Below, piece by piece: positions 16,160 to 57,616 of a DNA stretch of 64,000 nt. Each line of letters starts with the position of its first letter. The first letter of the stretch is position 1. Source of the stretch: Selaginella moellendorffii (lineage: Eukaryota; Plantae; Lycopodiophyta); the NCBI RefSeq assembly GCF_000143415.4, contig NW_003314263.1, forward strand, positions 3,916,451-3,980,450, written 5' to 3'. Position numbers and translations under genes: made by a program. The notes under the pieces were generated by a model. That model saw only the letters and a program-made list of their open reading frames with translations. It was not told the DNA's origin and did no database searches.

Positions 16160-16259
16160 NNNNNNNNNNNNNNNNNNNNNNNNNNNNNNNNNNNNNNNNN
16201 NNNNNNNNNNNNNNNNNNNNNNNNNNNNNNNNNNNNNNNNNNNNNNNNNNNNNNNNNNN
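16160..16259. other. Assembly gap (100 N)
   Basis: Run of 100 Ns. Confidence 1.
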
Positions 16260-17099
16260 CTACAGGAAATAAATTTATAATATAAATGAAATAGAACTTG
16301 TTTTTGGTTTGAAATTAGGAAAAGTTGGGAGTATTTTTGCAAGGGGTGAAAATTAGCTTTTAGATATGCATATATATCTTGGAAATATTGAAGGGAAAGA
16401 TTACCAAGAATCATATTAAAAGCTAAACATATCAGATGAAGACAATTTAGATATGCATTTTTAATCACAATATTAAATCACAAGTAATGTTGGTATAAAT
16501 CTACCACACAGTATTTGGACATTGCCAATTATATGTCACACTCTCAAAAGTTGCTTTAGTTTTCACATTTTTAAACATATACATATATGTGTAAGAATTT
16601 GAAAACCAAATATTACTCAAAAAGGTACATGAGAAATTTAGTTTATAAGAAAATACTATAAAATGGTGAAATAAATGCTTTAATTAAAAAACAAATTTGT
16701 ATTTAGCTATGTATATAAATTATACAGATGGAATGGAAATAAAATAAATACCTAACTGACTATGTTGTTTTGCCCTTCCTGTAAACACTTGTCAAGTATA
16801 ACTTCATAGGCCTATTTACACTTTAGAAAAAATTTCTTGAGGAACAAGTAGTTTTAAAATATCAATTGTTAACATATCATGCCTATTCATTAAAGCCATG
16901 GACAAGGCATAGGCTTTATTTAAAATATAGCTATTTTTTAAAAGAAATATTTTTGATTTAGCTAATAGGAGAATATACTTGGATATCCTAGGATATTTTA
17001 CCATCTAACAGTGGTTATTCATTTATTTGAATCTTGTATTTATAATTTATGAACATGTTTATAATTTATAAACTTCTCTAACCACTTTATATCATCGTG

Positions 17100-17671
17100 A
17101 TATGGTTGTGAGGTCTTTTGAAGCATGAGCCAAAGAAATACCATAACTTACAATGCATTGATTAGGGCCTACATCCAGAATGGCAATTGTGAGGGAGCTC
17201 TTAAAGTTTCTAGGCTCATGGATCAAACTGGTGTCAAAATCAATGATCTCAGCTATTGGCAATGATTGATGTTTGTGCAGGTATGGAGAATTTACTGCAA
17301 GTCAAGTCTCTTCTCTCCTTGATCTTGGGAGATGCCAAGTAAGAACACTGGGAATAAGTTTAGAAATGTATTTATTTCCATGTATGTCCAGTGTGGAGAC
17401 TTGAGTGCCTCCGTACTAGTGTTCTAGGATCAATGGATGGAACCATCATGATATCATGTCCTGGAACTCAATTCTTGCTTACTATACTCAAAATGGAAGA
17501 AGTGAAGAGTCTCTAGAGATGCTTTGGGAGATGAGGTTGGATGGATCTTATCAGTTGAACACCATCACCTTTAGCACTGTTTTGAGTGCTTGCAGCTGTG
17601 CTGGATTTGTGGATCATGCTCATGAATCCAATATGGAGATTTCAATATTGACTATCAAAATGAAGAACTAA
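17100..17671 (+). pseudogene. PPR gene fragment in the left arm (mirror copy ~21925-22460 on minus strand)
   Basis: NTITYNALIRAYIQNGNCEGALKV...SWNSILAYYTQNGRSEESLEMLWEM...TITFSTVLSACSCAGFVD, frameshifted. Confidence 0.8.
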
Positions 17672-18519
17672 AACCACTTCAAACAATAATGAAGAAAGAA
17701 TGATACATACAAATATTAAAATATAATACATGTTATAAGAAACTAATAGATCATATAAATAATATATACAAACAGATTATATATCATAATAAAAAATACT
17801 TAAAAACAAAAGCAAACCAAGCGTAGCAATTTATATTTTCATGAAAGCAAACCAAGAACAAACAATGGAAAAAAATGTTTCTAAACTCCAGGACGTCAAA
17901 GAAGTGGCGGCCAAAAGCCGAGAAAGACCACAGTCATCCAGACGGAGAGAAATGCCATGTAAGCATGCCACATCATTGCCAGCTTCACGGTGGTAGATGC
18001 TCGTTACAGCACAGCGACTTGTCGATCGCGCAAATGGTCTCACAAGATCCAAGCTCAACGTTCGTCCCGAGCTTCCCTGGGAGATGGAGATGGCTGACAT
18101 ATTTGTGGAAGGGACTGCTCAGGCAGTGTCCTACCAACGGAGAGCACTCGTTCGAGCCCATGGATGATTGTGAAACACGTAAATACTTAGGAGGCGAGCG
18201 AGCGCCCTCTGAGAGGATGAGCGACTTCTCGCAGGAGGAAGGGCTGCGCAAGATTCATGATAGGCCAGACTACAAGTTGGTTGTTCTCCATCTCCGCCAC
18301 TTCTATTGACCAGCCAAATATGCTTCTCCTTGTTCCTCCAGGCTTTGCACAGCAATTCAGTCTCTATGAACCAGGGGCACTCTTTCGCTCACCATCTTTT
18401 TCTGGGCACAAAGGAAAAACTTTCTTGGCAATACCATGTTTGGGAATTTTCAGAGCTTCGCCAGCAGTTCTGATGCCCCTGGAGAGGCGGAATTTCTTCT
18501 TCTTTAGAACAAAACCGGT

Positions 18520-18900
18520 GGATTATCCGCTGCAATCGCTGCCGGCGGCAGGTCCACAAACTAGCCATCGCCAATCTGTACTAGAAAGATTGTGGAGCTC
18601 GTTAACTCTTTTTTCATTTTTTTTTATTAGATCCTCTCGATCTCTTCTCACGGTTGTGACATTTTTAAATTTGAGCTGCTGAAGCCAACGCGGGAGCGCT
18701 ACAACATCTCTATCTAGCGAATGTTTCTTTCCAGATGAGAGCTCAAGCAGCGGGTGCTTCACACAACATAGGAAGCCATTCCAAAACCGGCGGAATCAAA
18801 TCGGCTGCTCTGAATCGGAAAACAAGGATTCTGGATCATGCGATATTTCAAACGTTCTGGTTTTCGAACCGAGCGTCAAACACTGGTAGAGAGATTTTTG
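18520..18900 (+). pseudogene. Deleted copy of the ARM-repeat gene (39055-40067) in the left arm (mirror ~20960-21320)
   Basis: Mirror copy 21073-21210 (tatgttgtgtgaagcacc...gagctctcacctggaaagaaacgttcgctagatagagatgt|tgtagcgctccagcg...aatgtcacaactgtgagaa) matches 39495-39560 and 39685-39765, intron sequence included. Confidence 0.85.
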
Positions 18901-19032
18901 TGCATGTCTGCAAGTTTAAGTTTTAGAATTTTGTTGCGAAGCAAACAAACGTTTTGGGGAGTCAGTCGTTGACAAGATGCCGAGCCTACCCAGCTTTAGG
19001 GGTCCGTGGCTTTGGTCAGTTGAGGGCTTTCA

Positions 19033-19710
19033 GCCGGACACGATAAAAAGGCCCTGAAAAATTGTGTTTTTACATGCTAAATGTACTGTCGAGGAACATA
19101 CCTTCTTACTACTAACGTAAGGTTCAGTCCTTAGGTTAGAGTGGGTTAAAAAAATGTAATCTTGATCTTGAGTTCCCGCCAAGGTGTCCAACTTTCGTGT
19201 AGCCGAGCCATTCACAAACACCAATACTTAATCTCTTGCATCCACCCAGCAGCACCCAGTGATCCCTCCAGGCCAAGTCCCACAGCTGGATCTCATGCTG
19301 TTGAGAGAGCTGCCGCTAGCATCCGCTGCCACAGCCAAATCCACGAGCAACACCACCATGAGCATCACCTCCTGCCCAACCGCCACTAGATCGCATGCTG
19401 CCGCCAGTGCTGCCGCCACGGCCAAATCCCATGCTGCCACCGACTGGTGCCACCCAAGGTCTAAACTCGAATTTTTATAATTTTTCAGAATTCCATTTGA
19501 TTGCTATCAAGGACAACATTTTAAAGTTTGTTTTTCCTCTCATGATTCTCCTACTTACAGTAGTTTGAGCTCTGGAACATGCCAGATGACTATACCACTC
19601 ACGACGGCCTAATTGCGGCCTTAGCGCAGTCTCCAGCGACTGGCATGGTTGCATTGGCGAGCCATGACAAGTGTGTCCATTGAAGTAGAGTGAGAAGAAG
19701 ACAACAGACT
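19033..19710 (+). pseudogene. Fragments of the LUG WD40 region in the left arm (3'-end part mirrored at ~20555-20750)
   Basis: gccggacacgataaaaagg matches 27458, acgtaaggttcagtcc matches 27603, cttgagttcccgccaa matches 27695 (intron), and 19565-19700 matches the last LUG exon and stop region (28408-28560). Confidence 0.9.
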
Positions 19711-20114
19711 TAAGCTAAGCAAATACCCATTGTTTTCTCTCTTTTTTTCATTCATAGGGCTTCCAGTGTTGAAACTACTACAAAATCACCTGTTATGGCT
19801 TTTGTTTTCCAACACACATCACATACCCAAAGAATATATACTTACTATGAATAACAAAGCCAGATTTTGCCAGGTTACAAGTGGATAGAGCTAATATGTA
19901 ATGTGATGGTTGTTTACAATTTATCAACGAAATCCAGGAAAGTAATCGAGAAAAAGATGAACAAAAACTTCTGGATGTTCGCTGGTGCAACAAAGAGAAG
20001 CTACTTTGAGTGTTCCAGACCCTCTAATTGTAACCATGCCCCACCCGATATTCATACGTTAGCTTTGGCTGCTCGTGCTTGTAGCATGAGCATTGAATAG
20101 AAGCCATAGAGATG

Positions 20115-22783
20115 TGGCAATGCAGATTGCTGGGCTCACCAACAAGGGGAACTTGAAGTCTGGCCTATCATAAATCTTGCACAGCGTTATCTTAGAGAAC
20201 CATTCCCCGCCTCTCACGCACCGGTTCCCATCATCCATGGATGGAAACCAAAGACCTTGGAATATTCTTAGTGTTAAGAATCTTGATTTCAGCTGATAAA
20301 TTGTAACAACCAGCGAGTGGGTAGTGTTTTCTCTTACACATTAAGATAATCCTTACATATTAGCTCTGCCCTCCATCTATCCACTTGTAACCTGGCAAAA
20401 TCTGGCTTTGTTATGATCTTTTAAGTTAAGGAAGTCTATATGCGAGTATTTTCTTTGGGTATGTGATGTGTGTTGGAAAACAAAAGCCATAACAGATGAT
20501 TTTGTAGTACTTTCAACACTGGAAGTCCTATGAATGAAACAACAAAAAGAAAACAACTTCTCTCACTCTACTTCAATTGACACACTTGTCATGGCTCGCC
20601 AATGCAACCATGCCAGTCGCTGGAGACTGCGCCAAGGCCGCAATTAGGCCGTCGTGAGTGGTATAGTCATATGGCATGTTCCACAGCTCAAACTGTAGCA
20701 GAATCATGAGAGGAAACACAAACGTTAAAATGTTGTCCTTACTAGCAATCACAGTGGAATAAAATTTTATGAAATCTTTTTACAAGTCGCGTAAGGAGTG
20801 GAAGAGGGATTAGCAGGGCGTGGCAGCATGAGATCTAGTGGTGGCGCTTGGGTAGGCTCGGCATCTTGTCAACGACTGACTCCCCAAAACGTTTGTTTGC
20901 TTCAAACATTTGAGCGTGACTCGCAACCAAATTCTAAAACTTAAGCTTGCACACCTGCAGTGTTTGACGCTCGGTTCGAAAACCGGAACGTTTGAAATAT
21001 CGCATGATCCAGAATCCTTGTTTCCCGATTCAGAGCAGCCGATTTGATTCCGCCGGTTTTGGAATGGCTTCCTATGTTGTGTGAAGCACCCGCTGCCTGA
21101 GCTCTCACCTGGAAAGAAACGTTCGCTAGATAGAGATGTTGTAGCGCTCCAGCGTTGGCTTCTTCCGTGGATGTCAGGAGCTCAAAGTTAAAAATGTCAC
21201 AACTGTGAGAAGAGATCGAGAGGATCTAATAAAAAAGAATGAAAAAAGAGTTAACGAGCTCCACAATCTTTCTAGTACAGATTAGCGATGGCTAGGCCGC
21301 CGGCAGCGATCGCAGCGGATAATCCACCGGTTTTTTTTCTAAAGAAGAAGAAATTCCGTCCCTCCAGGGGCATCAGAACTGCTGGCGAAGCTCTGAAAAT
21401 TCCCAAACATGGTATTCGACAAGTCGCTGTGCTGTAACGAGCATCTACCAGAACGTCGCATATGGGAGACGTAGGATCTATGGATCACTGCGATGGCGAG
21501 CTGTTTTTGCTCCAACCAGGCTGAGGCCTCGTCTCTCTCCACCTAGCTGGCAATGATGTGGCATGCTTACATGGCATTTCTCTCTTTCCACTCCAGTCTG
21601 CATCTGTCCGTCAGATGACTGTGGTCTTTCTCGGCTTTTGACCGGCACTTCTTTGACGTCCTGGGGTTTAGAGACATTTTTTTTCATTGTTTGTTCTTGG
21701 TTTGCTTTCATGAAAAAATAAATTGCCATGCTTGGCTTGCTTTTATTTTTAAGTGTTTTTTATTATGATATATAATTTGTTCATGGTGTTATTCCTACTT
21801 TTGTATATATTATTTATTTTATCCATATATGATTTATTAGTTTCTTATAACATTCTTTTATTATTTGTATGTATCTTTTTTTTCTCCATTATTGTTTAAA
21901 GTGGTTTTGGTTCTTCATTTTGATAGTCAATATTGAAATCTCCATGCTGGATTCACAAGCATGATCCATGAATCCAGCACAGCTGCAAGCACTCAAAAGA
22001 GTGCTAAAGGTGATGGTGTTCAGCTTATAAGATCCATCCAACCTCATCTCTCAAAACATCTCTAGAGACTCTTCACTTTTTCCATTCTGAATGTAGTAAG
22101 CAAGAATTGAGTTCTAGGATATGATATCATGATGGTTCCATCCACTGATCCTAGAACACTAATACAGAGGCACTCTCCACACTGGACATACATGGAAATT
22201 AATACATTTCCAAGCTTATTCCTAGTGTTCTTACTTGCTGGCATCTCCCAAGATCCAGGAGAGAAGAGACTTGGCTTGTAGTAAATGCTCCATACCTGCA
22301 CAAACATCAATCATTGCTAGTCATTGATTTTGACACCAATTTGATCCATAAGCCTAGAAACTTTAAGAGCTCCCTCACAATTGCCATTCTAGATGTAGGC
22401 CCTAAGCAATGCATTGTAAGTTATGGTATTTCTTTGGCTCATGCTTCAAAAGACCCCATGACTAGATCACAATGATACAAAGTGGTTAGAAAAGTTTATA
22501 AATTATAAACATGTTCATAAATTATAAATACAAAATTTATCTAAATGAATAACCACTGTTAAATGGTAAAATATCCTAGAATATCTAAACATATTCTCTT
22601 ATAACCTGGCAATGCAGATTCCTGGGCTCACCAAGAAGGGGAACTTGAAGTCTGGCCTATCATAAATCCTGCACGGCATTATCTTAGAGAACCATTCCAT
22701 GCCTCTCATGCACCAGTAGGTTCCCATCATCCATGGATGCCTGCTGAGTCCTAAACCAAAGACCTTGGAATATTCTTAGTGTT
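20115..22783 (+). repeat. Direct repeats of ~160-175 bp (20115-20275 and 22607-22783) bracketing the right arm
   Basis: tggcaatgcagatt(g/c)ctgggctcaccaa...gaacttgaagtctggcctatcataaatc...aaaccaaagaccttggaatattcttagtgtt occurs at both sites. Confidence 0.9.
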
Positions 22784-23678
22784 TAGATTCAGCTTTGCAC
22801 TATCCCGTTTTGCATGGAGCATGCAAGAATGCAATTTCCAGTTGGTTAAATTCCAGAAAGTAAAATCGTATCTGCAGAAAATATATGTCTAAGCTCCATA
22901 AATTAGAGCATAAGTACGAGAATCTAGTATGTGTAAGCTGAATTCATGGATCCAAGTCGCTTAGAACACAAGTGGAGAAGTGGAGTATGTTTGTTTCTTT
23001 TTACATCTTTTGCAACCTTAAGATCATATTAGCAAAGAGTTTTCACTGCCAGCGATATGGAAGAAGTGGAGCTACGATGTCACGATGATCAAGAGAACCA
23101 TATAGTAGAGCACAGAGCAAATAATAGATTGGACACTCACAGGAGTAGCTTACGTTCCTAACTAATTACATATTGGGTCTCCTTTTTAAATCCTTAGTGA
23201 TGATCAGGAGATTGGAAAAGATGCTTTTTTCCACAAATTATACTAATTTGAGTTAAGAGTGCTTAAGATTTTAACCCCGTAAAATATTCTAGGAGATGGC
23301 CGACATATTTGAGCGTGGCAGGAAGGGGTGAGCCCAGCAATCTGCGATTGCCAGGTGATTCTCAAACTCCGCAAGTACTATCCAACGAGCAGCCAAACCT
23401 TACATATAAATATCGGGTGGAGCATGGTTACAATTAGAGGGTCTGGACACTCAAAGCAGTGTCTCTTCCAGCCGATAGGAGCATTCTTTCGTAGAAATCT
23501 TCGTGCTCACCATCTTTTTCTGAACGCGCAAAGAATTAAAGAACCACTTTCTTGTGCCACACTCTGCACCTAAAGAGATCCTTTTTTTTAATTTGGCAGA
23601 GCTCGATAATTCCAGCGAGCTCCGGCGAAAGAAGCCTAGCTTGAGCATTCCCAGCGCTTGTTTGAGCGAACGAATTGA

Positions 23679-23900
23679 TCAATTGCTAGGGAAACATAGA
23701 ACGAGCTCCACATTCTGTCTCTCATAGCACAGATTGAGAATCACATCCGCTGCGGTCGCTGCTGGCAACGTTACCTTGGCGGCGGCGATTCTGGTAAGCA
23801 AACCTTTCTTCTCTAATGTCTCAGTAGTGACATTAGCTGACATCCGCACGGAAGAAGCCAACGCTGCGGGAGCGCGACAGAGCATCTGTTTCCACCCGAC
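23679..23900 (-). pseudogene. Second degenerate copy of the ARM-repeat gene
   Basis: Encodes VILNLCYERQNVELVL, identical to the ARM gene. An adjacent plus-strand piece EEANAAGARQSICFHP matches another ARM exon, so the copy is locally scrambled. Confidence 0.8.
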
Positions 23901-24633
23901 CAGATCTCTTGAGTAGAACTTTCAAGGTTCCTCCTTTAAAACTCTACCTAAGCGTCCCATGTGAGAGCCCCAGCAGCGGGTTCCACAACTTATGCTCCGC
24001 GAAAGCCATTTCTTAAGATCATTTCTTAAGAGTTGGATCATACTCGAAATCTCTCTGAGATGTTTTGAAAACGTCTGGAGAGAATGAATTGTTACGCGCT
24101 AAAGCTGATAAGAACAGGGCGCAAGCATTTATGTAGGAATGACTCTGATCGTTGACATTGCATCAGCTGATGGTTTTGTTCTCGCGCTTGAAGCTCAAAT
24201 TTTTTACGTTTTGGCGCGGTCAACGAGAGTCTGACTGGCAAGACTGCCGAGCCTACCCAGCTTTGGCAAGATATCCCCAAATGGCCTTGCCGGACCTCCC
24301 CGGTGTGGTAGGTCCGTGACCGAGCCTGCGTGCCTTGCAGAAAGAAGCACACACTTAAACACTCTATAGCTCGAACACTCCTTGTTTTGCAAGCTCGTGG
24401 CTATGGCGGATCCATGGACGCGAGCGCTATCGAGCAGGGGCGCCTAAAGATCTCGGTTCCAAGGTCAGTGCTCTTCCTGCCCCCTGCATTCTCTCTCGGC
24501 AGAGGTGATTGCGCAGCTCAGGGTTTTGTGCGAGTCCTAGGAGGATTTTCGCGTGCCACTGCAATGACGAGGGCTTTCATCTGCAGGATAGGCGGATTCT
24601 ATTGCCGGAGTCCTTCGAAAGAGGGGAGGCGCA

Positions 24634-27600
24634 ATGGCGCAAAGTAACTGGGAAGCCGATAAGATGTAAGCGTTTGGATTTCTTTTTGTCCTTCTCGTTG
24701 TTTGAGTAAGATTGGGATTGGCAGGCTCGATGTTTATATACACGACTATCTTGTGAAGAAAAACCTCCAGGCCTCTGCCAAGGCCTTTCAGACAGAGGGC
24801 AAAGTTTCTGGCGATCCTGTCGGTAAGAGCTCCTCTCCGTAGAGATTCTTGTCCTCATAGGAGTTCCATTGCTCCTTTTTTTCCCTTTTTTTTTCGATGC
24901 AGCGATTGATGCTCCTGGTGGTTTTTTGTTCGAGTGGTGGTCCGTGTTCTGGGACATTTTCATTGCTCGTACGAATGAAAAGCACTCAGAGGTGGCTGCT
25001 TCATATATCGAGGTAAGCTTTTCCTCTTCCTATTCATTTTTCTTATTCATCACCCCTTGTGCTACAGACTCAGCAACTCAAGGCGAGAGAACAACAGCAG
25101 CAACACCAGCATCTTCAGCACCAGCAGCAACAGCAGCAAATTCAGCAGCAGCAGCACCAGCAGCAGCACCAACAACAATTACAACAAAGTCAGCAGCAGC
25201 AGCAACAGCAGCAGCAGTTGCAGCAAAGTCAGCAGCAGCAGCAGCAGCAACAACAACAGCTGCAGCAAAACCAGCAGCAACACCAGCAACAGCAGCAGCA
25301 CCAGCAGCAGCAGCAACACCAGCAGCAACTTCACATGCAGCAGATTCAACTCCTCCAGCGTCAAGCCCAGCAGCAGCAGCAACCTCGGAGGGATCTGGCC
25401 ATAAACGCTGCTGCAAACGGCATGGGTGGTGATTCACTCCCCCCAACTGCGAATGCAATGGCAACCAAAATCTACGAGGAGCGTCTCAAGCATCCACACC
25501 AACGTGACACTCTCGAAGATATTAAGGTCTGTTCAGTTGCCGTGACCCAAGGGACGCATTCTGACTGGGGGTCTTTGCAGAGATACGGAGAGCCTCCGGG
25601 ACAGCTTTTGGATCCAAGCCCGACAAGTCTGCTTAAAGGAGCGCCGACTCCTGGCCAGCCGTCTGGGTAAATGATCTTTTTTCTTTGATGTCATTACGTT
25701 TTCAAACTCTGGAAATGGACAGGCCTTTACTTCCAGCTAGTGCTGCTGGATTGCAACAAGTTCAGAACAGGCCTCAGCTCTCTGGAGTCTCTCAGGTACG
25801 TGTTCTGGTCTTCTAGTCTCTGTCCGGCTCATTCGTTTTTTACACAAAACAGGACAGCAAGAGCGACGGCAACGTAGTTTTGAATCAAAGATCACCTGCA
25901 CCGGATCCTTCCATGTTTGGGCATGCCAAGCCAAACCTTCTTAGTCCAGGTATGCTCTTGACTTTAAGAGTGCGCTTGAGTTGACGTTTTAACTATCGGC
26001 AGGAGTCAATCAAGGAGGAAATGCAATGTCATTGAAAGGCTGGTCATTAGCTGTAAGTGCAATCGACACGGAAGTATTTGTTGTTTGACGTTGGTGTCTT
26101 GCGCTGCTCAGGGAATGGATCAGCTTCGCCCGACGCTAGTGCAAAATCAGAAGCCGTCTTTGCAGGCTTCTCAAGCATATCATATACTGAGTCCTCAGCA
26201 CCAGCACTTACTGCTTCAGGCTCAGGCGCAAGGAAGCTTGCCTTCGTCCAATTCCGCTCTCCTTGGTGACGTAGACGGGAGAAGGTTTCGCATGCTTCTC
26301 AGTCGGAATCAAAACCAAATGGGCAAAGATGGTCAAGCTGGTCTCAGCGAGGTCGGATCACCTATGCAGGCTGCAACACTCCTGCCTCGTGGTAATCCAC
26401 AGGATCAGGGGGAGATGCTGATGAAGGTACTATCTTCATTTTTCACTCATGGAGCTTGAAGTGTTTCTTTTCATTTTTTGGCAGATGAAAATGGCCCAGT
26501 CGCAGCAAGCTCAAAGTGGCCAACAGCCACAGCCACCACAGTCTTCTCAACAAGGGCAGCAAGCGCAGCAGCAACCGGCAACGCCACAACAGCAGCAGCA
26601 GCAGCAGCAACAACTACAACAAGAGAGAATGGGTGTTGTTGGAGTTGATGGTGCGCTGTCCAACTCCTTTAGGGGAACCGGCGACCAGGTTTATAGCGGC
26701 ATGGAGCCGAGTCCCAGTACGAATAGCACAGGGACTGGAAAGGTGAAAGTGAGATATAATTTGTAGCGTCAACGTTCTTACGTTTCTTCGTTTTATTTCC
26801 TTTTCGTCTACAGGTTGCTGCTAAAGGTCCCAGTGGCCGAAAACGGAAGCAACCGGCGTCATCCTCTGGTCCAGCTAATAGTACGGGTACAGCGAACACG
26901 GCGGGTCCGAATTCCCCATCGTCTCCATCAACACATACGCCTGGCGATGTCATTTCCATGGCGGGAGCTTTACAACAAAATGGAAACATCTCCAAGTCGC
27001 TTATGATGTACGGGTCAGATGGAGCTGGGACGCTTGCTTCGCCTACAAACCAGCTGGTAAGAACTATATGCTGTAAGCTGCAATAGGATGGTTTTTTCCT
27101 GATTTTCTCTGTAATGGCTTTTTTGTCAAGGGTCTGAGTGGTGGAAATTGAAGTTGCAGGCTGATATTGACCGCTTCGGCGAAGATCCGTCGCTGGATGA
27201 TAACGTCGAGTCCTTTTTATCGCACGACGACGCAGATCATCGCGATGGCTTGTTTGGAAGCAGCAAACAGAGCCCTGCCATGGATGTGAGCAAAGGCACA
27301 TATCTATTTCGATAAATGCATTTCGATAGAATTTCTCCTCTTACTGTTGGTTTGAATTCATTGACCAGGTTTTCTTAGCGAAGTAGGTTGCTTGCGAGCA
27401 AGTACGAGCAAGGTTGTCTGTTGCCATTTCTCGTCCGACGGGAAACTTCTTGCAAGCGCCGGACACGATAAAAAGGTCTGGAAAAAAATGTGTTTTTAAG
27501 TCAATGCCGTATGCTAATTGTTCTCTTGGCAGGCTGTTCTCTGGAATATGGACACTCTAAAGCTCAAGAGTACCCTCGAGGAGCACACCTTTCTTATTAC

Positions 27601-28547
27601 TGACGTAAGGTTCAGTCCAAACTCCACGCGCCTGGCGACCTCGTCATTTGATAAGACCGTGAGAGTGTGGGATGCAGACAATGTAAGTCTTGAGCTTGAG
27701 TTCCCGCCAACCGAATCATGCGGACTAATTCTTGTCCAACTCTCGTGTAGCCGAGCTATTCCTTGAGAACGTTCACCGGCCATCAGACGTCGGTTATGTC
27801 GCTTGACTTCCATCCCGTGAACGAGGACCTGCTGTGTTCTTGCGACGGAGATAGCGAGATACGCTACTGGAGTGTGAGCCAAGGCGTTTGCACCAGAGTC
27901 TTCAAGGTTTGTCTGTCTCTTTGCGAAGCACGGTGCTGATGCGTGATAAGTTGCAGGGTGGTATGGCGCAGACGAGGTTCCAGCCAAGAGTCGGAAGGTT
28001 ATTGGCGGCAGCTGCCGAGAATGTGGTCTCTATTTTTGATGTGGATACCGAGACTTGTGTACATTCCTTACAGGTAGGCACGTCTTCTGTGGTAATCTTT
28101 GCTCAAATCTTTTTCTTTTCTGGCAGCGACACACGAAGCCGGTACACTCGGTGTGCTGGGACGCTACTGGCGACTACGTCGCTTCGGTCAGTGAAGATTC
28201 GGTTCGAGTATGGGCACTAAATGGAAGCGATGGCGATTGCATCCACGAGCTGAACTGCAACGGGAACAAGTTCCACTCTTGTGTGTTCCACCCCAAGTTA
28301 CCGACTTTGCTGGTCATCGGTTGCTATCAAGTACGGCAGTTTAAAGTTTATTTTTTTCCTCGTTTTGTGTGTGTCTTGATGTTCATGGTTCTTCTACTTG
28401 CAGTCGCTTGAGCTCTGGAACATGCAAGAGAACAAGACCATGACTATACCCGCTCATGACGGCCTGATCGCGGCCTTGGCACAATCTCCAGCGACTGGCA
28501 TGGTTGCGTCGGCGAGCCATGACAAGTGTGTCAGGCTGTGGAAGTAG
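24634..28547 (+). CDS. LUG: Transcriptional corepressor LEUNIG/LUH (LisH-LUFS, Q-rich, WD40)
   Basis: [11 protein letters not shown]|[36 protein letters not shown], polyQ, and WD40 repeats ending [13 protein letters not shown]. Confidence 0.96.
25089..25383 (+). repeat. CAG/CAA polyglutamine tract in LUG
   Basis: About 100 codons dominated by CAG/CAA, interrupted by His/Leu/Ser. A second short tract lies at 26587-26622. Confidence 0.95.
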
Positions 28548-28762
28548 AATGAGAGAGCCAGAGACAACATGAATAGCTACAGGGATTCACAAGAATCTCA
28601 AAGCTGTTTATAGAGAAGCACAGATTTGTGACAACAGGTATGAATTCCACAGATTTATATTTCCTATTTCACGGTGGTGTCAGTTGTTTACACGACAACG
28701 AGAAAAGCAAACCAGTTTACAGGAGAAGGCGGGGGCGAGTTTTCGGCTCCTGCTTGCTGCTC

Positions 28763-32164: not shown

Positions 32165-33239
32165 AGCTCTAGCCCTACCAATCAAGATCCTTATTATTTT
32201 TGTCGCAGATGATAGAATTTTCTTTCCTTTAGCAATTATATTGGGGTAAAATAAATTTGAATAGTATTTGATTTAATTAGTTAGATATTGGTTAGCTTGA
32301 GAAACCTGTTGATCTGTCAGTTTGATCTAGCCTACCTTGACTAAGCAATCCTTATCCAATAGAAGGGCAGGATGTAAACAAATAAGACACCCTTCTTGTC
32401 TCCCATGCATATTCCTTGCAAGGAAATTAGATAATTTCTTCCTGCCTTCAACACACCCTTATATGGAAGAGAGATGAACAGAACGTCTACTTTCCCATGC
32501 TTCCTTTGAAAATGCCGCTACAGAAGGCAATGTGAATTAAAAAACTGGCCAACAATAAGTCAACACATAGGCTTTAGCTTGTTTGCAGTCCCTGAGATCT
32601 CACAGGGCAAAACAATTACCACAGTGGGTGTCTATTTCAGAATATAATACATAAGTACACATTATATTATAGTAAATAGCATTTCAAATTGCAAAATAAA
32701 TTTACTATTGTAAGTCTAGTGGACCTCTGAAGTTTAAATCTTTATCATTTAAATTTTAAATCAAAAAATATAAAAGAGATGTAACGCTTTTAGTTTATCC
32801 AAAGCATTTCAACTTTAACAATATAAGAACCCAATGAATTTTTGGTCTAAGTAGCGTGAAAAGTAGAGCCTGTATAAAATTAATATATTTTTGAGTAAGA
32901 TTTATTCTCATAATTATAAGATAAAAAAATAAAAATAACTTTACCAATATTCTGCCAGATTTGCAACTTGGAAAACAAACTAAAATTTTGTTCTTTTGAG
33001 TTAAATAAAATATGTTTCAGCATAATTTCTCTTGTGTGTAGCCTATTTCATGAGACTGCTTTCAAGGTTTTTTTCAATTGTTTCAAGTTCCTATCTATGA
33101 CTTTTAACTTTCATGAGAAAATAATACTACCACCTTGTCATGGCTTTAAATTTAACTAGAAACATGCTTTTTATTTCCCCAAAGCTTTAGAATGGAGGTA
33201 AATTAATAAAATTTTAATCCAGATCTTTGTATTAAGCTA

Positions 33240-34097
33240 TTATGTTGATCTCCATATACAAGTTTGAGAGATAGTATTATATACAACTGCATAGCCAGTA
33301 TTCTCAACACAAAGTGCATAAGAAACCCAAACATTCTTGTGATATATATTATAGGACCAAATAATACTATTATTCATGTCATATATCACAAGATTTCCAT
33401 CTTTTTGTAATCTAAGGAAACATCGCTCACCTTTATTATTAGTTTTAGTGTCCCAAATTACAATTTTTTTATAATAAAGTACTAAATTACAATCAAGTTG
33501 CATATACAAATTATATAACTGATTTGGAGATTGAAGAAAAGCCCCATTTTTTAATTTTGAAAAGCTGGAATACTGTGGTCCACTTTTTATACAAGTATTA
33601 TAAAAATTACAGTCTTGCTCATGTTTATTGTTTACTGACATAAAATAGTTTTGCTGCAAAGGAAATGTGTAATCTTCATCTATGACATAAGATATAGAAA
33701 ATCTATAATATATGTATTCTGCAAAGCCATAAGTTACTAGATCATTTAAAACATAATTTTTCAAGAGAAACATAAATTCAGATTCTAAATATGATCCTGT
33801 ATTATACAAACGCAGATTCGGAATTATAGTACAAGTTATGACATATGTCTTAAAAGTATGATATACATCAAGAGCTGCTATTGTTATTAATAAGGAGCTA
33901 TAATCTTCATATATTACTTTAGAGTAAGAAAATCCTATGAACGATTCATCCCGTTTTCCAACTTCCTTTATAAGTTCTAGAATAATTGGTATAATGATTT
34001 TTTGTCTATAACTAATTGTAATAGCATTTGGGTATTCATAGTTTTTAATTAAGCAGTAACACTGTAAGCATAAAGATAAAAACAAAACAAATATCAT
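33240..34097 (-). CDS. Secreted protein with a C-terminal bulb-type mannose-binding lectin domain
   Basis: Intronless 285-aa ORF with a hydrophobic N-terminus. MQLDCNLVLY and LQKDGNLVIY match QxDxNxVxY. Very AT-rich. Confidence 0.85.
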   Translation of the reverse strand: MIFVLFLSLCLQCYCLIKNYEYPNAITISYRQKIIIPIILELIKEVGKRDESFIGFSYSKVIYEDYSSLLITIAALDVYHTFKTYVITCTIIPNLRLYNTGSYLESEFMFLLKNYVLNDLVTYGFAEYIYYRFSISYVIDEDYTFPLQQNYFMSVNNKHEQDCNFYNTCIKSGPQYSSFSKLKNGAFLQSPNQLYNLYMQLDCNLVLYYKKIVIWDTKTNNKGERCFLRLQKDGNLVIYDMNNSIIWSYNIYHKNVWVSYALCVENTGYAVVYNTISQTCIWRST

Positions 34098-35051
34098 GAA
34101 GTACTAAATTAACATCATCTTGTTCTATCATCTATTTAATAAGAATTACTCTCTTTTATTAATGCTGTTACAAATTTAAGACCTAACTTTAACTATAATT
34201 TAAAAATAGCTAGTTTCAAACTTTATCTAATAATTTTATACTTTTCCAAGTATATTTTGTGTATATTATTACTTTTCACCAAAAAAAATTTCTACTAATA
34301 GATAACGTAGCTTTTTCTTTATTTAAAAAGTAATACTCTCTCATCAGTATTGTCAGTTTTTATATTTTACTCTATATTTTATATTTTATATTCTAAATAA
34401 ATAACTGTATTCTTTATTCATTTTACATGGCCCATCCTAAAAGTTGAAAATTAGAACTTTATATTTTATAAAATTTTCAAGAGTTGTTAAGAACTCAAAC
34501 TTTGATTATAGTGGAATTAACTGAGAACTTAGTATACTTCAAGTATTATCAAATAGATGAGTATAGTTAGACTTTCTTTAATTTGTAAGTCTTTTTTACA
34601 CTAGATACTTTCTAATTATAGACATAAAGTTAAGTTTATGTTGTTATGGTATGTATGTATGACCTGTTTTAGATCTTATAGTGCCCATCTGAGATAAGCC
34701 ACTTTTTTAAAGAGTTTTTATGCTAGAAATATTTTCTTATTTATATTTTTTTTAAATGTAATTTTTAAATTATTAATTATAAATAAATGCTATTAAAATG
34801 AAGATAACTGTTTATAAGATTTTAATTCTAAAGTGATACATATATACTACTACTAATAATAATAAAAAAACTTTTAATGTTTTGATTTGTATCATTTGTA
34901 TAATACAGGGATATATTAATCTGAATTCACAATTCTTTTAACAATTATATTATTTGGTAGCTTATGCGTTTCAAAATAAACATACTATATATATCTTATA
35001 CCATAGATATATGTGATAGAAATAAAGTGCAAATTATATATTTATTATAAT

Positions 35052-36650
35052 TTATTTAAAGCTCTCTCTAAAACAAGATGCTCCAAGGAAACACCTCCAT
35101 TCTAAAGCCTGGGGAATAAAAGGCATGTTGGTAATTAAATCTTTAGCCATGACAAGATGGCTAGATCGACCCAGCAAATCAATTGCACAACAGTAATGTT
35201 GGCTTGTGGGTTGAATGCCGAAGTCAAAACTCATAGACAGAAATCTAGCTCTCCCTTGAAACAATTTTCCAGCATGGCTAGAGGCAAGAAAAATTATGCT
35301 GAAGCATATTTCATCTGGCTCCTCAGTCAGGCATAAAGAACCAAAACTATACAAAACATTATCAAACTGTCCGGCTTGGGCATATGTTGCAAGAAGCGTG
35401 TTCCAAGAAACTACATCTTTATCTAGCATTTGATTAAAATAATTCTTACAGTGCTCAACTTGAAATATTCTGGAATAAACAAAAAGCATTACATTACAAG
35501 TGACAAGATCTCTTTCGGGACTTCCGTTGAACAAATGAAAGGCCTCCTCCCAGTAGCCATTCTGGGCATATCCAGAGAGCATACAATTAAAAGAAGAAAT
35601 GTTCCACTCTGGCATTGTGTCAAAAGTTTTTCTTGCTTGATCAATGTAGCCATTATGTGAGTAAGTGGAAAGCAATGTATTGAAGAGCAAAAGGCTCTTG
35701 TGTGGAGTTTGATCAAACACGAGCTTTGCCAGCTCCAGGTTTTGATGGATCGAGCACGCACTGATCATTGCAGCAGCGGAGGCTAAGTCATGCTGAGGTG
35801 ACGAATCAAACAACCGCTTCGATCGCCCAAGATCCTTCTCATGGCTGAGCATCATAGTGATCGAAACTAAGCTCTTTCCTGGCATTGACTCAAAAAATTC
35901 TCTAGTCCCCTCAGATCTCTCTCCCTGGACAAGAGCGGCCAGCATTGTATTGAGAGAAACAAGGCTATGGAACGGCATCTCACGGAAAATCTTGCAAACA
36001 AATTCTAGATATCCCTTTTGGGCATATGCAGTAAGAAGCGTGTTCCATGACACGACATCAACCTCAGGCATTGATTCGAACAATTCTTTTGCTTCTTCAA
36101 TGCGGCCGTAAGCGGCATGGGCGTTTAGGATTACATTCCACGTAACGAGCGTCCACTCTGGCATTGCAAAGAACATGTCCCTAGATAAGAACAAATGCCC
36201 CTTTTCGGCAAGTGCCTTTAGAACAGTTGTCATTGACACAAGATCTCTTTCTGGCATGTTTTGGAAGAAATCTCTAACTTGGCTCAAGCTACTGTTCTTG
36301 CAAAATGCAGCCAGAAGCGAGTTCCAAGATACCAGATCCCACTCGGGCATCTGGCGGAAGAAATCAAAGGCCTGATGGAACTCCCCGGCCTGGACATGGG
36401 CCGCTAGCATAGCGTTCCACGACACAATACTGCGCTGCGGCATCCTGAGAAATATGACCTTGGCGCTGCTGGAATTCCTGCTAGAGGCCATGGCGGAAAG
36501 AATGGTGTTCCAGGCAAGAAGATTGGGAGCGGGCATTTGCTCAAAGAGGAGCTGAGCGTCGCGAACTCGCCCATCGCGAGCGCGTGAGGAGATTTTTCGC
36601 ACCCAAGCAGAAGAATCGTCAATTGTCCCGGTCGAGCAAAAGCCTTCCAT
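35052..36650 (-). CDS. PLS-class PPR protein, SS-motif array with truncated E domain
   Basis: 31-aa repeats (MPEWDLVSWNSLL...), HYCCAIDLLGRSSHL...MPFIP; no DYW domain. Confidence 0.9.
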   Translation of the reverse strand: MEGFCSTGTIDDSSAWVRKISSRARDGRVRDAQLLFEQMPAPNLLAWNTILSAMASSRNSSSAKVIFLRMPQRSIVSWNAMLAAHVQAGEFHQAFDFFRQMPEWDLVSWNSLLAAFCKNSSLSQVRDFFQNMPERDLVSMTTVLKALAEKGHLFLSRDMFFAMPEWTLVTWNVILNAHAAYGRIEEAKELFESMPEVDVVSWNTLLTAYAQKGYLEFVCKIFREMPFHSLVSLNTMLAALVQGERSEGTREFFESMPGKSLVSITMMLSHEKDLGRSKRLFDSSPQHDLASAAAMISACSIHQNLELAKLVFDQTPHKSLLLFNTLLSTYSHNGYIDQARKTFDTMPEWNISSFNCMLSGYAQNGYWEEAFHLFNGSPERDLVTCNVMLFVYSRIFQVEHCKNYFNQMLDKDVVSWNTLLATYAQAGQFDNVLYSFGSLCLTEEPDEICFSIIFLASSHAGKLFQGRARFLSMSFDFGIQPTSQHYCCAIDLLGRSSHLVMAKDLITNMPFIPQALEWRCFLGASCFRESFK

Positions 36651-36789: not shown

Positions 36790-36862
36790 CGAACATCTCG
36801 AGAGTGGTCGCAAGCCGGACAGTGGTCTGAACAGCGATGCGATGTTTTTCGTCCATTTGCTA
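36790..36862 (+). pseudogene. Short ARM-gene fragment
   Basis: aacatctcgagag...gaacagcgatgcgatgttttt..gtccatttgct matches the ARM exon around 39305-39378 (minus strand). Confidence 0.65.
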
Positions 36863-37129: not shown

Positions 37130-39030
37130 CCATTCCATCTGGCTAAAACCAAATATGTCCAACTTGAAATATTCTTGGACAACCAGCATGTAATGTCATC
37201 AATAGCTTCCTACAATTAAACTCTTGACAATGTTATCCTTGAATAAGTAGAAAGCAGGGCATTGAAGAGCAAAGGCCCTTGTGTGTCAAACACGCAGCTT
37301 CAAGTGGATAGAGCACTCACTGAACATTGCATGCTGAGGAGACTAATCAAACAACAAGCTTTGATTGCCCAAGATCATTTTCATGAGCGGGCATTACGAA
37401 ACATGCAGATATCCCTTTTTCTTATGCAGCGAGTTGCGTGTTCCATGACCTCTAGCATCAAAGTCAAACACTTGCTTTGCTTCTTCTACGGGACAGTAAG
37501 CCGTGCATTTAAGATTATGTTCCACGTAGTGAGCGTTCACTCTTCTCTGGCATTGTAAAGAACATCTCCCGAGATAAACCAAATGCCCTCTTTCGGCAAG
37601 TGCCTAAGAACAGTTACAAGATCCCTCTCTCGCATGTTTTGGAAGAACATTATAGGGTTCCACGATACCACATCCCACTGGTGGAAGAAATCATAGGCTT
37701 GATGGAATCCCCTGGCCTGAAAGACACAATACTGCACTGCGCCATCCTGAGAAATATGGCATTGCTGAAATTCCCGAGCAGGTGAACATGGTTTTTTTTG
37801 CAGAAAACCATAGTGTGGGTCATTTGGTCTCAATTTTACACTAGGTTAACAGTAGGTTGGTAAGGTATATTTTTCAACTAAAAAATATATCAATAAAGAA
37901 TAATTTACCTTCTATATAAAGTTATATAGAGAAAATATGTGAAAAAGGAAACACCAGATGAAAATCTTGTAGATCTCTGTTAGCTATACCAAATTATTGT
38001 TGAAGTTGTGATGAGGGTGGTGGAGTTAGCACTTAGCTATGGTATATTATAATCATGTAGTGCTCATTTTTTAACTCAATTAGAAAAATATTTGATGTTA
38101 AAATTCATAATATAAAACCACTTCCAGTCCATTTAGATTCATAATTTAAAACCACTTTGTAAGTACAGAAAACTATTCTAAACCATAAACACGAAACTCT
38201 ATCAAAATCATAAACATAATTTATTGTGTAGGTTTACTTGTATTTTAAACATTTTATATTATTATAATATATAATTTTAATAGAGATATTAATAGAATTT
38301 TTTTTTTGACATAGAGAATGTTTAATTTCTATTTCACACATTGCACACTTCTAGTTTATCAAATTCAAGCTTTTAATAGGGACTTGCTGTTATGATGAAG
38401 TTATTAACACCTCTCTTTCTATGAAAGATAATAGAATGTCTAATAAAATTCTTGATTACTTTTTATATTACTCTTTGAACTCTAATCATCACCAGCAATG
38501 ACCTATATTGGAGAATCTATAACTAAAGAAAAGAAAAAAGAATAAAGAGTTCTACACTCAACAGAATAATGTCCTCACTAAGAAATTAAGGGTATTTGAC
38601 TGGAAGATATTAAATGTCAATGCCCTCCAAAAAGAAAAAGAATTCTACTTTAGATAAACAATGATTGGCAATCTTTATCCGATGAAGAGAAGCTAATGAC
38701 AACATTCTATTGCTCAAACATAATCAACCATTGTTGTTTAAATTTTTTTTATAAATTATAAATATGCTTTTAATTTATAAATGCAAAATTATGAATGTGA
38801 TATTATAATCCATATTATTTACAATGGAAATTTTCATATAAACACCATCCAAAGTCCAACATTTAATCATGTGAACGATTATGAAAAACCATGTTTATTA
38901 GGCAAACAATGGTCACCGGCTCCCTGTGCTAGTGGCCATGGCGGAAAGAATAAGAAGCAGGCATTTGCTCAAAGAGGAGCTGAGCGTCTCGATATTGCGA
39001 GCGCGTAAGTCAATCAAAAGCCTTCCATGG
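37130..39030 (-). pseudogene. Degenerate tandem copy of PPR 35052-36650, split by a ~1 kb AT-rich insert (~37830-38890)
   Basis: 38927-39030 matches 36480-36650 (ggccatggcggaaagaat, gctcaaagaggagctgagcgtc, caaaagccttccatg). 37150-37780 matches 35450-36480 with many deletions. Confidence 0.85.
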
Positions 39031-39054: not shown

Positions 39055-40067
39055 TTATTGTTGCGAGAGGGAAGTAAAAAGAGTTCTAACCTCTTGAGTG
39101 AAAAAAATGTTATGAACGATGCTTGCCAGCATGATATTTCTCATTGCTCGCACAATGCTAGCCCGTTTCTTATAACAGGTATGTGAGTCTCTCCCCAGCA
39201 AGTTTAGCAGGGCTCCCGCGGCGCAAACCTGTGGAAAGATCTTTCTAGCAATTCTAGTTCGTGTTTCTCGCAAGTTACCTGTGTTTGAAGCTCGGAGCTG
39301 CCAAGCAAATGGACCAAGGAAAACATCGCGTCGCTGTTCCGGATCATCGTCCTGCTCGCAATCTCTCTCGAGATGTTTTGGAGAGCGCCGGCAGCTGACC
39401 CGCAAATGCCGAGTTGCCGGCTCTGGAGCAGCCGTATGAGTGATTTGATTCCACCCTTCTTGCGAATCTCGCGAATGGCTTCGCCGTCGGAGCTTATGTT
39501 GTGCAAAGCGCCAGTTGCTCGAGCTCTCACCTGAAAAGAAACTTTTGCTAGATAGAGATGTGAAGGAAGAACGTTGGAGAGTTTACTCACGCTCTGGGAT
39601 TTGGACGAGAGCAATTGGACAAGTATCGCGATTGCTCCCAGCGTTCGCACGATCTGGCGGCCTTTTGGGTGGAAGCAAATGCTCTGTAGCGCTCCAGCGG
39701 CGTTGGCCTGGAGCTCTTCTTCCGTGGATATGAGCAGCTCAATCTAATGTCACAACTGTGAGAAAGGACAAACAAAAAAGAAGAAAAGAGATTTTCTCAC
39801 CAGAATCGCGGCGCCATTGTTGTTTAGAACGAGCTCCACATTCTGCCTCTCATAGCACAGATTGAGTATAACATTCGCCCCCTCTGCTGCGATCGCCGCT
39901 GGCAAAGATCTGTCCCCCAAGCAATCGAGCAATTCGCCCATGTACTGCTGGCCCAGCACTACCCTCTGCCCCTTCTTTCTCGTCAGGACCTTCAACTGCA
40001 TCATAAAAGGGAGCAACTCTTGCGGCTCCACTGCCCCAAGATCGCCCAACGCCATGGCCCCAGCCAT
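39055..40067 (-). CDS. Small armadillo-repeat protein (~260 aa), spliced
   Basis: ANAAGALQSIC, RARATGALHNIS, GGIKSLIRLL, SAAGALQNIS, CAAGALLNL. Confidence 0.85.
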
Positions 40068-56453: not shown

Positions 56454-56589
56454 TCCCTGCAACGATTCCAGACGTGGGCAGGGAATGTGCTTGGTGGAGT
56501 CGAGGCCTGACTTTCATTTGCTCGTCTCCTACTTGGCATTTCTTGAGACTAAGTACATTCCCTGTCCACGTCTGGAATCGTTGCAGGGA
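56454..56589 (+). ncRNA. pre-miRNA-like hairpin (or small fold-back element)
   Basis: 42-bp stem: tccctgcaacgattccagacgtgggcagggaatgtgcttggt / actaagtacattccctgtccacgtctggaatcgttgcaggga. The three differences are all G:U on the plus strand. Confidence 0.55.
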
Positions 56590-57043
56590 GCCTCTGTGAG
56601 TGGATCATGACTCTCAGAGCTTGTCCTCTTGCTCTTGCTCCAATGAAATGCCCTCCGTCTATCCCCTCGACATGACCCAGCTCTCGTAAGAATCAAGCTC
56701 CTTTTTCTTCCTTCTTCGCAAGAAATTTCTCTTCGTTTTGTGCTGTGGCAGGAAGATGACTGGAGTAGAGTACGTGCTGCTCGAAGCCAGGAGCCCAATC
56801 TCTTTGTCCTCCACAAGTAAAAGACTATATCCTCGACGGCCATATCTATCAATTACCGCTGCTCTACAGTGTTGTTTGCAGCAGATGGTTAAATCACGAG
56901 GCCTTTCTTGTGCTGCTTCTGATGATCCGCCAGCTGTGCATCACATCTCCACTGCCTTCTGCCAAGTCTCAGCAAAGCTCGAGAAGTCTTTTGTTCCTGT
57001 CCCTGACGATGCTCTGATGTAGACCATGAGAATGAGCTGTGCA

Positions 57044-57616
57044 ATGAAGATCTTCATTCCCCTCGTTCTAACACTGGTTTTTGCAATTGCTCCTGCACAA
57101 TCGAGCCTCCCAAATGCGGGAGAATTGGATCTATCAAAGTGCACCGAGGTGATCCGGTTCTACTTGCAAGACCAGTTCAATGGGAGCAATCCGACAACAG
57201 CAATTGTCCTGCCTCCTCGTAACAACGAAACGTTGTTTGGTCAGGTTGCCATTTTTTATGACAAGCTGACTACGGAGTCCTCGATCAACTCCAAGCTTGT
57301 GGGAAGAGCCAAGGGTTTTCTGGTGATAGATTCGCTGGGCAAAAGCAGCTTTCTCCAGATCATGATGGAGCTGGAAGGGCGGAAAGGTACAATAGTGCTC
57401 CATGGTCAGAACCCCTTCACTGAGTCCCAAAGGGAAATAGCCGTTGTTGGGGGCACAGGAGAGTTCAGAAACGTTCAGGGCTACGCATTAACGAGCACAA
57501 CTGGAGCTGAACCTGGTGGGCTTATTGCAATCTACGAAGTTCATCTGGTGAGGCTCTGGAAATGCATCTGGAAATGCTTCAACATGAAACTCATATTTTA
57601 CTATTTCATTTTGTAA
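57044..57616 (+). CDS. Dirigent protein (copy 1)
   Basis: IRFYLQD, FGQVAIFYDKLT, VGRAKG, REIAVVGGTGEFRNVQGYA. C-terminus extended by indels. Confidence 0.9.
   Translation: MKIFIPLVLTLVFAIAPAQSSLPNAGELDLSKCTEVIRFYLQDQFNGSNPTTAIVLPPRNNETLFGQVAIFYDKLTTESSINSKLVGRAKGFLVIDSLGKSSFLQIMMELEGRKGTIVLHGQNPFTESQREIAVVGGTGEFRNVQGYALTSTTGAEPGGLIAIYEVHLVRLWKCIWKCFNMKLIFYYFIL

What the first reader, a model, noticed from the sequence alone, without database searches (positions are those of the whole stretch)
16965..22602. 5.6-kb fold-back built from captured fragments of neighbouring genes: candidate multi-target hairpin-RNA / proto-miRNA locus
Seen: two arms (~3.0 and ~2.3 kb) separated by ~340 bp are reverse complements. 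Each arm is a mosaic of a PPR fragment, a deleted ARM-gene copy (intact gene at 39-40 kb), a short motif from upstream of LUG (ccgagcctacccagcttt, 18980 vs 24247) and LUG WD40 exons. Introns are retained, so capture happened at the DNA level. The arms share the same chimeric junctions, so the mosaic formed first and was then inverted-duplicated. Established: inverted gene duplications give rise to plant hpRNA and young miRNA loci. Inference: one transcript could produce small RNAs against a Groucho-type corepressor, an ARM protein and PPRs. Selaginella moellendorffii is reported to lack DCL4/RDR6, so processing of such a long hairpin would itself be unusual if this is that species.
Basis: partly seen in the sequence, partly recalled or inferred. 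Interest (0 to 1): 0.85.

Follow-up and report, generated by a model that had tools for sequence, protein, structure and literature searches.

The report
Haplotype-variable duplication scar beside LEUNIG
A real 5.6-kb inverted repeat in the spikemoss Selaginella moellendorffii is mostly a decayed copy of the neighbouring LEUNIG gene region; its two halves probably face each other in only one of the plant's two chromosome copies, and nothing yet shows that it is transcribed or silences genes.

Summary
The inverted repeat is real: arms 16960-19930 and 20290-22607, about 6% substitutions plus many indels. The window is S. moellendorffii scaffold GL377567.1. The arms are mostly not separately captured genes. 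Window 18080-19706 is a deletion-riddled, same-strand copy of the contiguous neighbour 23290-28570 (unknown fragment Y, an already decayed ARM remnant, LUG upstream DNA, LUG 3' exons); only the PPR piece and three short segments come from elsewhere. The arms show no selection for RNA pairing (G:U 39, A:C 37) or for matching LUG mRNA (synonymous sites differ most). The other haplotype (GL377609.1) joins spacer-type sequence directly to the LUG upstream region at a 26-nt core, as expected if 20.0-23.4 kb is inverted there; then the arms are direct repeats and no hairpin exists. Only about 125 discriminating bases were reachable, so conversion is not excluded. If transcribed, the fold-back could give good guides against LUG only (45-57 exonic 21-mers per arm; ARM 1-5; local PPRs none). 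The scan noted similar gene-fragment inverted repeats elsewhere in this genome. Verdict: probably rearrangement debris; an LUG-silencing endoIR stays possible (about 10%).

The parts
16960..19930 (+). Left arm (L), composite block P-X-Y-ARM remnant-LUG upstream-LUG exon pieces-W
17096..17670 (+). PPR pseudogene fragment (frameshifted, CpG o/e 0.09); parent gene not in the window (best 34% aa)
18040..18430 (+). Left-arm-only copy of unidentified fragment Y, homologous to 23290-23555 and to the spacer
18480..18800 (+). ARM remnant in L; shares two 9-nt coding deletions and an internal inversion with the remnant at 23660-24060
18800..18997 (+). Copy of LUG upstream DNA (about 24000-24264), 20-nt exact match at 18978
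19033..19213 (+). Left-arm-only pieces of LUG exons 13-15 with intron DNA
19501..19695 (+). LUG exon 17 end, intron 17 and exon 18 (frameshifted); main source of LUG-matching 21-mers; partner 20562-20748
19706..19930 (+). Segment W, origin unknown, no Pfam hit; innermost paired segment
19931..20289 (-). Spacer: an inverted copy of Y; its part beyond the core is 98% identical to the sequence next to the LUG upstream region in the other haplotype
20014..20039 (-). 26-nt core, exact inverted match to 23422-23447; inferred crossover or conversion point between haplotypes
20290..22607 (-). Right arm (R), copy of L with its own deletions
22601..22790 (-). Ya: about 185-nt direct repeat of 20115-20290 (7.1% diverged) flanking R, with microhomology at both junctions
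23290..23555 (+). Y copy at the source locus; contains the second core (23422-23447)
23660..24060 (+). Rearranged ARM remnant upstream of LUG (U), present in both haplotypes; immediate source lineage of the ARM pieces in the arms
24634..28547 (+). Intact LEUNIG-like gene (LisH, Q-rich, WD40), 18 exons, 926 aa; source of the LUG pieces and only plausible siRNA target
39055..40067 (-). Intact ARM-repeat gene, distant ancestor of the remnants
16160..16259 (.). Assembly gap (100 N) 700 nt left of the repeat; none inside the repeat

Best explanation
A selectively neutral scar of repeated local DNA rearrangement next to LUG. Shown: an ARM copy decayed upstream of LUG; the segment Y-ARM remnant-LUG was then copied about 5 kb upstream on the same strand, joined to a PPR pseudogene and other bits, and eroded by deletions (218 of 2781 LUG coding bases left) to give L. 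L was copied again as R, which sits between two copies of a 185-nt piece (Ya) with microhomology at both joints. Inferred: R arose by templated insertion with two template switches; recombination at a 26-nt core shared by two old inverted Y copies flips the 3.4-kb segment holding R, so the arms face each other in this haplotype and are probably direct repeats in the other. The hairpin is then a by-product of orientation, not a selected RNA gene. Which orientation is ancestral is not determined.
For: Collinearity of 18080-19706 with 23290-28570 and shared derived deletions and inversion in the ARM remnant. G:U 39 vs A:C 37 mismatches, p=0.91, also in inner and outer parts separately. Large reciprocal indels break the stem. 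LUG pieces differ from LUG at 24-29% of synonymous and 6% of non-synonymous sites, as for a pseudogene beside a conserved gene. Arm divergence (inner 3.7%, outer 7.8%) mirrors regional haplotype divergence (U region 3.4%, AT-rich intergenic 6-7%). Haplotype B end sequence fits the window with 20027-23434 inverted (162 matches, 3 mismatches) far better than as assembled (132, 13), and that model leaves no long inverted repeat. Another haplotype inversion lies at 38072-38821.
Against: Only about 125 discriminating bases of haplotype B could be read; a gene-conversion tract would look the same and leave the hairpin in both haplotypes. The inner arms keep their CpGs (35 kept, 4 decayed), so they do not look methylated and silenced, and they include LUG upstream DNA facing the stem. 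The best-kept LUG piece (exon 18) lies in the paired inner stem. No expression data were available.
Confidence: 0.62

Rival explanations
1. Transcribed endogenous inverted repeat (endoIR / proto-MIRNA). Pol II starting in the copied LUG upstream DNA or in Y reads through the spacer, the RNA folds back, and DCL1 or DCL3 cuts it into small RNAs, some of which can pair with the last LUG exon (functional repression of LUG is the smaller part of this probability).
For: Strong predicted fold-back on either strand (1271 nt, -710 to -734 kcal/mol, about 385 long-range pairs); 30 perfect runs of 21 nt or more, longest 72; 57 and 45 exonic 21-mers at Allen score <=3 against LUG, 5-6 perfect; inner arms CpG-rich; one 191-aa gene model is called across spacer and left arm; endoIRs are RDR-independent.
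Against: No wobble bias or target-match constraint; any inverted duplicate folds this well; no Rfam hit; no match of the LUG-antisense stem in a published list of S. moellendorffii miRNA candidates (partial files); LUG core promoter and 5' exons are deleted from the arms; species lacks DCL2 and DCL4 and a 24-nt peak; haplotype B differs at the breakpoint.
Confidence: 0.2
2. Assembly artefact: L and R are alleles or duplicated contigs of the two haplotypes joined in opposite orientation.
For: Arm divergence is within the range of haplotype divergence in decayed regions; a 100-N gap lies 700 nt away; the interval is 9 kb here and about 55 kb in haplotype B.
Against: No gap inside the repeat; L and R have different neighbours at both ends; the window's spacer differs from haplotype B's matching sequence by 3 substitutions and a 10-nt deletion, so it is not haplotype B sequence pasted in.
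Confidence: 0.07
3. Transposon-mediated capture (Pack-MULE, Helitron or foldback element) assembled gene fragments between or within inverted arms.
For: Intron-containing fragments of several genes; PPR, X, W and the low-complexity block have no parent in the window.
Against: Most fragments are one collinear copy of the adjacent locus; no 8-11-nt target-site duplication or Helitron-type ends by inspection of the junctions; no transposase ORF.
Confidence: 0.06
4. One-step inverted triplication (+/-/+; DUP-TRP/INV-DUP or ODIRA type) followed by arm-to-arm gene conversion that keeps L and R alike.
For: The three copies L, R and the LUG locus lie +/-/+; inner arms are more alike than outer arms (p=1e-4).
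Against: L and R share many deletions and the P and W segments absent from the source, which fits two steps; the inner/outer difference equals the regional mutation-rate difference; R is flanked by a direct repeat.
Confidence: 0.05

Closest known systems
Endogenous inverted repeats (endoIR), e.g. Arabidopsis IR71 (PMC10827316)
   Same: Multi-kilobase imperfect fold-back of similar size (IR71 gives about 3 kb dsRNA); non-coding; would be RDR-independent.
   Different: IR71 is shown to be transcribed and diced by DCL2 and DCL3; here transcription and siRNAs are untested, DCL2 and DCL4 are absent from the species, and the orientation seems polymorphic.
MIRNA birth by inverted duplication of the target gene (Allen et al. 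2004 model; Aha-miR217 in bioRxiv 10.1101/2024.07.25.605110)
   Same: Arms contain sense and antisense copies of a neighbouring gene with good predicted target sites; direct plus reverse duplication at one locus.
   Different: No defined miRNA/miRNA* duplex, 340-490-nt loop, kilobase stem, no sign of selection on pairing or target match.
Polymorphic inverted repeats near genes in Arabidopsis (Arce et al. 2023, as cited in PMC10827316)
   Same: Inverted repeat close to a protein-coding gene (2 kb upstream of LUG) and apparently differing between haplotypes.
   Different: Those are mostly transposon-derived and act through 24-nt siRNA methylation; this one is gene-derived, CpG-rich inside, in a species without a clear 24-nt peak (PMC5569507).
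Template-switch (FoSTeS/MMBIR) duplications and inversions between inverted repeats (own knowledge)
   Same: Local source, microhomology at joints, re-copied flank, exact shared core at the inferred inversion breakpoints.
   Different: Here the products are old (6-7% diverged) and further eroded by deletions; mechanism inferred from junctions only.
Pack-MULEs / Helitrons (own knowledge)
   Same: Intron-retaining fragments of several genes in one block.
   Different: No TIR-TSD or Helitron ends seen; fragments mainly collinear with the adjacent locus.

Membership tests
endoIR / hairpin-RNA locus | Long genomic inverted repeat able to fold back | tested here: met
endoIR / hairpin-RNA locus | Single transcript through both arms | not testable with these tools
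endoIR / hairpin-RNA locus | DCL-dependent, RDR-independent 21-24-nt RNAs from the arms | not testable with these tools
   no small-RNA reads available; partial miRNA list shows no match to the LUG-antisense stem
endoIR / hairpin-RNA locus | Selection on pairing (strand-biased G:U, few stem-breaking indels) | tested here: not met
   G:U 39 vs A:C 37; about 38 indels. Not required of young endoIRs
MIRNA born by inverted target duplication | Arm sequence complementary to a target gene (score <=3) | tested here: met
   LUG 57 and 45 exonic 21-mers; ARM 1 and 5; local PPRs 0
MIRNA born by inverted target duplication | Precisely excised miRNA/miRNA* duplex and target cleavage | not testable with these tools
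   no reads or degradome; no Rfam family hit
MIRNA born by inverted target duplication | Constraint keeping the match to the target | tested here: not met
   synonymous sites differ at 24-29%, non-synonymous 6%, non-coding 12-19%; small sample
Pack-MULE / foldback transposon | Terminal inverted repeats flanked by an 8-11-nt target-site duplication | tested here: not met
   outer junctions show no such duplication (by inspection)
Pack-MULE / foldback transposon | Termini repeated elsewhere in the genome | not testable with these tools
   no plant-genome DNA search available
Local segmental duplication with later inversion | Collinear, same-strand, intron-containing copy of an adjacent segment with shared derived lesions | tested here: met
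Local segmental duplication with later inversion | Both breakpoints and the whole segment reversed in the other haplotype | tested here: inconclusive
   one breakpoint fits; the other lies in unreachable sequence GL377609.1:352289-397162

The most novel reading that the evidence does not exclude
An inversion polymorphism switches a decayed LUG duplicate between tandem and fold-back orientation, so that one haplotype makes a long hairpin RNA that DCL1 or DCL3 cuts (the species has no DCL2 or DCL4) into small RNAs that repress the LEUNIG corepressor in cis and in trans: a proto-MIRNA caught at birth and still segregating.
Probability: 0.1. Interest if true: 0.7.

Novelty: new member of a known kind. 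Interest (0 to 1): 0.3.

Why it matters
As most likely read, it matters little: a gene-derived inverted repeat left by local rearrangement, of a kind the scan has met several times in this genome. It is a clear example of how a tandem pseudogene plus one small inversion can create a kilobase hairpin in one step, the raw material of the inverted-duplication route to new miRNAs. If small RNAs were found, it would be a natural test of how a vascular plant without DCL2, DCL4 and RDR6 handles long fold-back RNA, with the other haplotype as a built-in control and a conserved developmental corepressor as target.

Tried and rejected
Rfam: no hit. Metagenome scan with a 25-nt arm word: none. Ten arm ORFs and exon ORFs are not in the protein collection. 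Y, X, W, Z and the low-complexity block stay unidentified (Pfam; PDB; Atlas). SWEET-exon and protease-exon searches missed the Selaginella proteins because of the length window; one exon aligned to a returned homologue found the protease. The sigma-70 promoter scan is not applicable to a plant and gave chance levels. The automatic quartet count on the ARM remnant was discarded because its alignment was poor; the shared deletions are read. Banks et al. 2011 is not held; its DCL4/RDR6 claim is taken second-hand and from an independent table. Rejected: capture of ARM directly from 39-40 kb; the window's PPR genes as source or target; higher inner-arm identity as evidence of selection; methylation-driven silencing of the inner arms (CpGs are kept).
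Full report
Source. Exact protein look-ups place the window on Selaginella moellendorffii scaffold GL377567.1 of GCA_000143415.2 (record position = 3916450 + window position) and give the other haplotype as GL377609.1.

Observation. Self-alignment shows an inverted repeat with arms 16960-19930 (L) and 20290-22607 (R); the innermost match is 341 nt apart. Gap-free blocks cover 1913 columns with 116 substitutions (6.1%); about 38 indels interrupt them, including left-arm-only blocks at 18026-18429 and 18993-19410. PPR fragments are confirmed by Pfam. The gene at 24634-28547 is an intact LEUNIG-like gene of 18 exons and 926 aa (WD40 hits; 54% identical to a returned homologue over 735 columns). 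The ARM gene at 39055-40067 reads as intact. There is no gap in the repeat; a 100-N gap lies at 16160-16259.

What the arms are made of. A more sensitive alignment shows the repeat system does not stop at 22602. Window 18080-19706 aligns in order and on the same strand with 23290-28570: an unidentified fragment Y, an ARM remnant (U, 23660-24060), LUG upstream DNA to 24264, then, after a 3.2-kb deletion, pieces of LUG exons 13-15 and 17-18 with their introns. The ARM pieces in L and R share with U, against the intact gene, a 9-nt deletion in exon 2, a 9-nt deletion in the exon-1 piece, and the inversion of that piece relative to the rest. Deletions in conserved coding sequence must be derived, so the arms descend from U, not separately from the gene at 39-40 kb. 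U is present in both haplotypes. The mosaic is therefore mainly one eroded duplicate of the neighbouring segment; only 218 of 2781 LUG coding bases survive in L. The PPR pseudogene, X (17880-18025), a low-complexity block (19240-19460) and W (19706-19930) have no parent in the window and remain unexplained.

How R arose. The spacer is itself an inverted Y copy, and R is flanked by a direct repeat of about 185 nt (22601-22790 and 20115-20290) that is 7.1% diverged, like the arms, with short microhomology at both joints. I infer a templated insertion of the L block into a Y copy with two template switches. L, whose outer end runs on into similar AT-rich DNA, is taken as the older copy.

The other haplotype. 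Walking by single-exon genes reached GL377609.1:352288. It follows the window from 36671 down to about 23420; beyond a 26-nt core that is exactly repeated in inverted form at 20014-20039 and 23422-23447 it switches to spacer-type sequence: 97 of 99 bases identical to the spacer against 79 of 89 to the window's own 23330-23420. Inverting 20027-23434 in silico raises the fit of the last 175 bases from 132 matches and 13 mismatches to 162 and 3, and turns L, R and the LUG locus into direct repeats with no long hairpin. This is the expected breakpoint of an inversion between the two Y copies, but only about 125 discriminating bases are visible and a conversion tract would look the same. From the other side, haplotype B leaves the window at 15277 into a Ty3/Gypsy-like element, and the interval is about 55 kb against 9 kb here. 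The window's spacer differs from haplotype B by 3 substitutions and a 10-nt deletion, which argues against a simple haplotype mis-join.

Signs of function. Mismatches that would be G:U on a plus-strand RNA number 39, those that would be G:U on the minus strand 37 (p=0.91), with no bias in either half. The inner arms are more alike than the outer (3.7% vs 7.8%, p=1e-4), but the haplotypes differ by the same amounts in comparable DNA (3.4% in U, 6-7% in AT-rich intergenic DNA), so this needs no selection. The LUG pieces differ from LUG at 24-29% of synonymous, 6% of non-synonymous and 12-19% of non-coding sites: the pattern of a pseudogene beside a conserved gene, not of sequence held to match an mRNA; the sample is small. 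On the other side, the inner arms keep their CpGs (35 kept in both, 4 decayed) while the PPR part is CpG-depleted, so the inner stem does not look methylated; the fold-back is strong on both strands; and 57 (L) and 45 (R) 21-mers score 3 or better against LUG exons, 5-6 perfectly, with exact runs up to 23 nt. ARM offers 1 and 5 such guides, the two PPR genes of the window none. If anything is targeted it is LUG alone. One 191-aa multi-exon gene model is called at 20238-19228 on the minus strand; it has no Pfam hit and I give it little weight. Rfam has no match, and six words from the LUG-antisense stem are absent from the held supplements of PMC5569507 (some files cut).

Known context. endoIRs such as Arabidopsis IR71 are Pol II fold-backs diced by DCL2/3/4 with DCL1's help, independent of RDRs, and are suspected starting points of MIRNA genes (PMC10827316); inverted duplication of a coding gene is an accepted but rare route to new miRNAs (10.1101/2024.07.25.605110). 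S. moellendorffii is reported to lack DCL4 and RDR6 (PMC3835848), has one DCL1, two DCL3 and no DCL2 or DCL4 (PMC4607528), and shows no clear 24-nt peak or phased siRNAs (PMC5569507). RDR6 loss is irrelevant to a fold-back; the lack of DCL2 and DCL4 would make processing informative but not impossible. The locus meets the structural criterion for an endoIR, not yet the defining ones (transcript, siRNAs).

Earlier notes of the scan list several other gene-fragment inverted repeats in this genome, one of them a +/-/+ block reported to differ between haplotypes and to be untranscribed. They are unchecked and were seen after my reading was formed; they suggest the pattern is recurrent here.

Verdict. 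A real, gene-derived inverted repeat, best explained as neutral duplication debris whose fold-back orientation probably belongs to one haplotype (0.62). A transcribed endoIR is the main rival (0.2; LUG regulation about 0.1). New member of a known kind; interest 0.3.

Noticed in passing
window 38072-38821 vs L001 17243-17902: A second small inversion between the two haplotypes, in the decayed PPR/ARM cluster.
   Followed up: partly
window 36792-36861 and 37240-37770: Another ARM fragment (inverted match to 39304-39377) and a deletion-riddled copy of the PPR gene at 35052-36650; 38927-39010 also matches that PPR.
   Followed up: no
L005 1-8900 (GL377609.1, upstream of the cysteine protease): Ty3/Gypsy-like retroelement with protease, RT/RNase H and integrase-like ORFs in haplotype B, where the window has other DNA and a gap.
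   Followed up: partly
window 33130-35160: The B-lectin ORF (33240-34097) lies within nested inverted matches (33130-33199 / 35093-35160 and 33678-33810 / 34895-35008): a decayed inverted lectin duplicate.
   Followed up: no
window 16555-16610 and 17039-17072: Short AT-rich palindromes; the second recurs at 236-261 and 38748-38790, possibly MITE remnants.
   Followed up: no
window 27295-27369: LUG intron 12 has a GC donor in my model; haplotype B's annotated LUG is 953 aa against 926 aa here.
   Followed up: no
window 57026-57616 and 59031-59567: Tandem pair of dirigent genes, 87% identical.
   Followed up: no
window 56454-56589: 42-nt inverted repeat, 93% complementary, next to the kinase gene.
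   Followed up: no
window 18040-18430, 19931-20289, 22601-22790, 23290-23555: Four decayed copies of an unidentified sequence Y with coding-like stretches; no Pfam, PDB or Atlas match.
   Followed up: partly
window 39055-40067: The intact-looking ARM gene is called in haplotype B (281 aa) but not listed among called genes in this haplotype.
   Followed up: no
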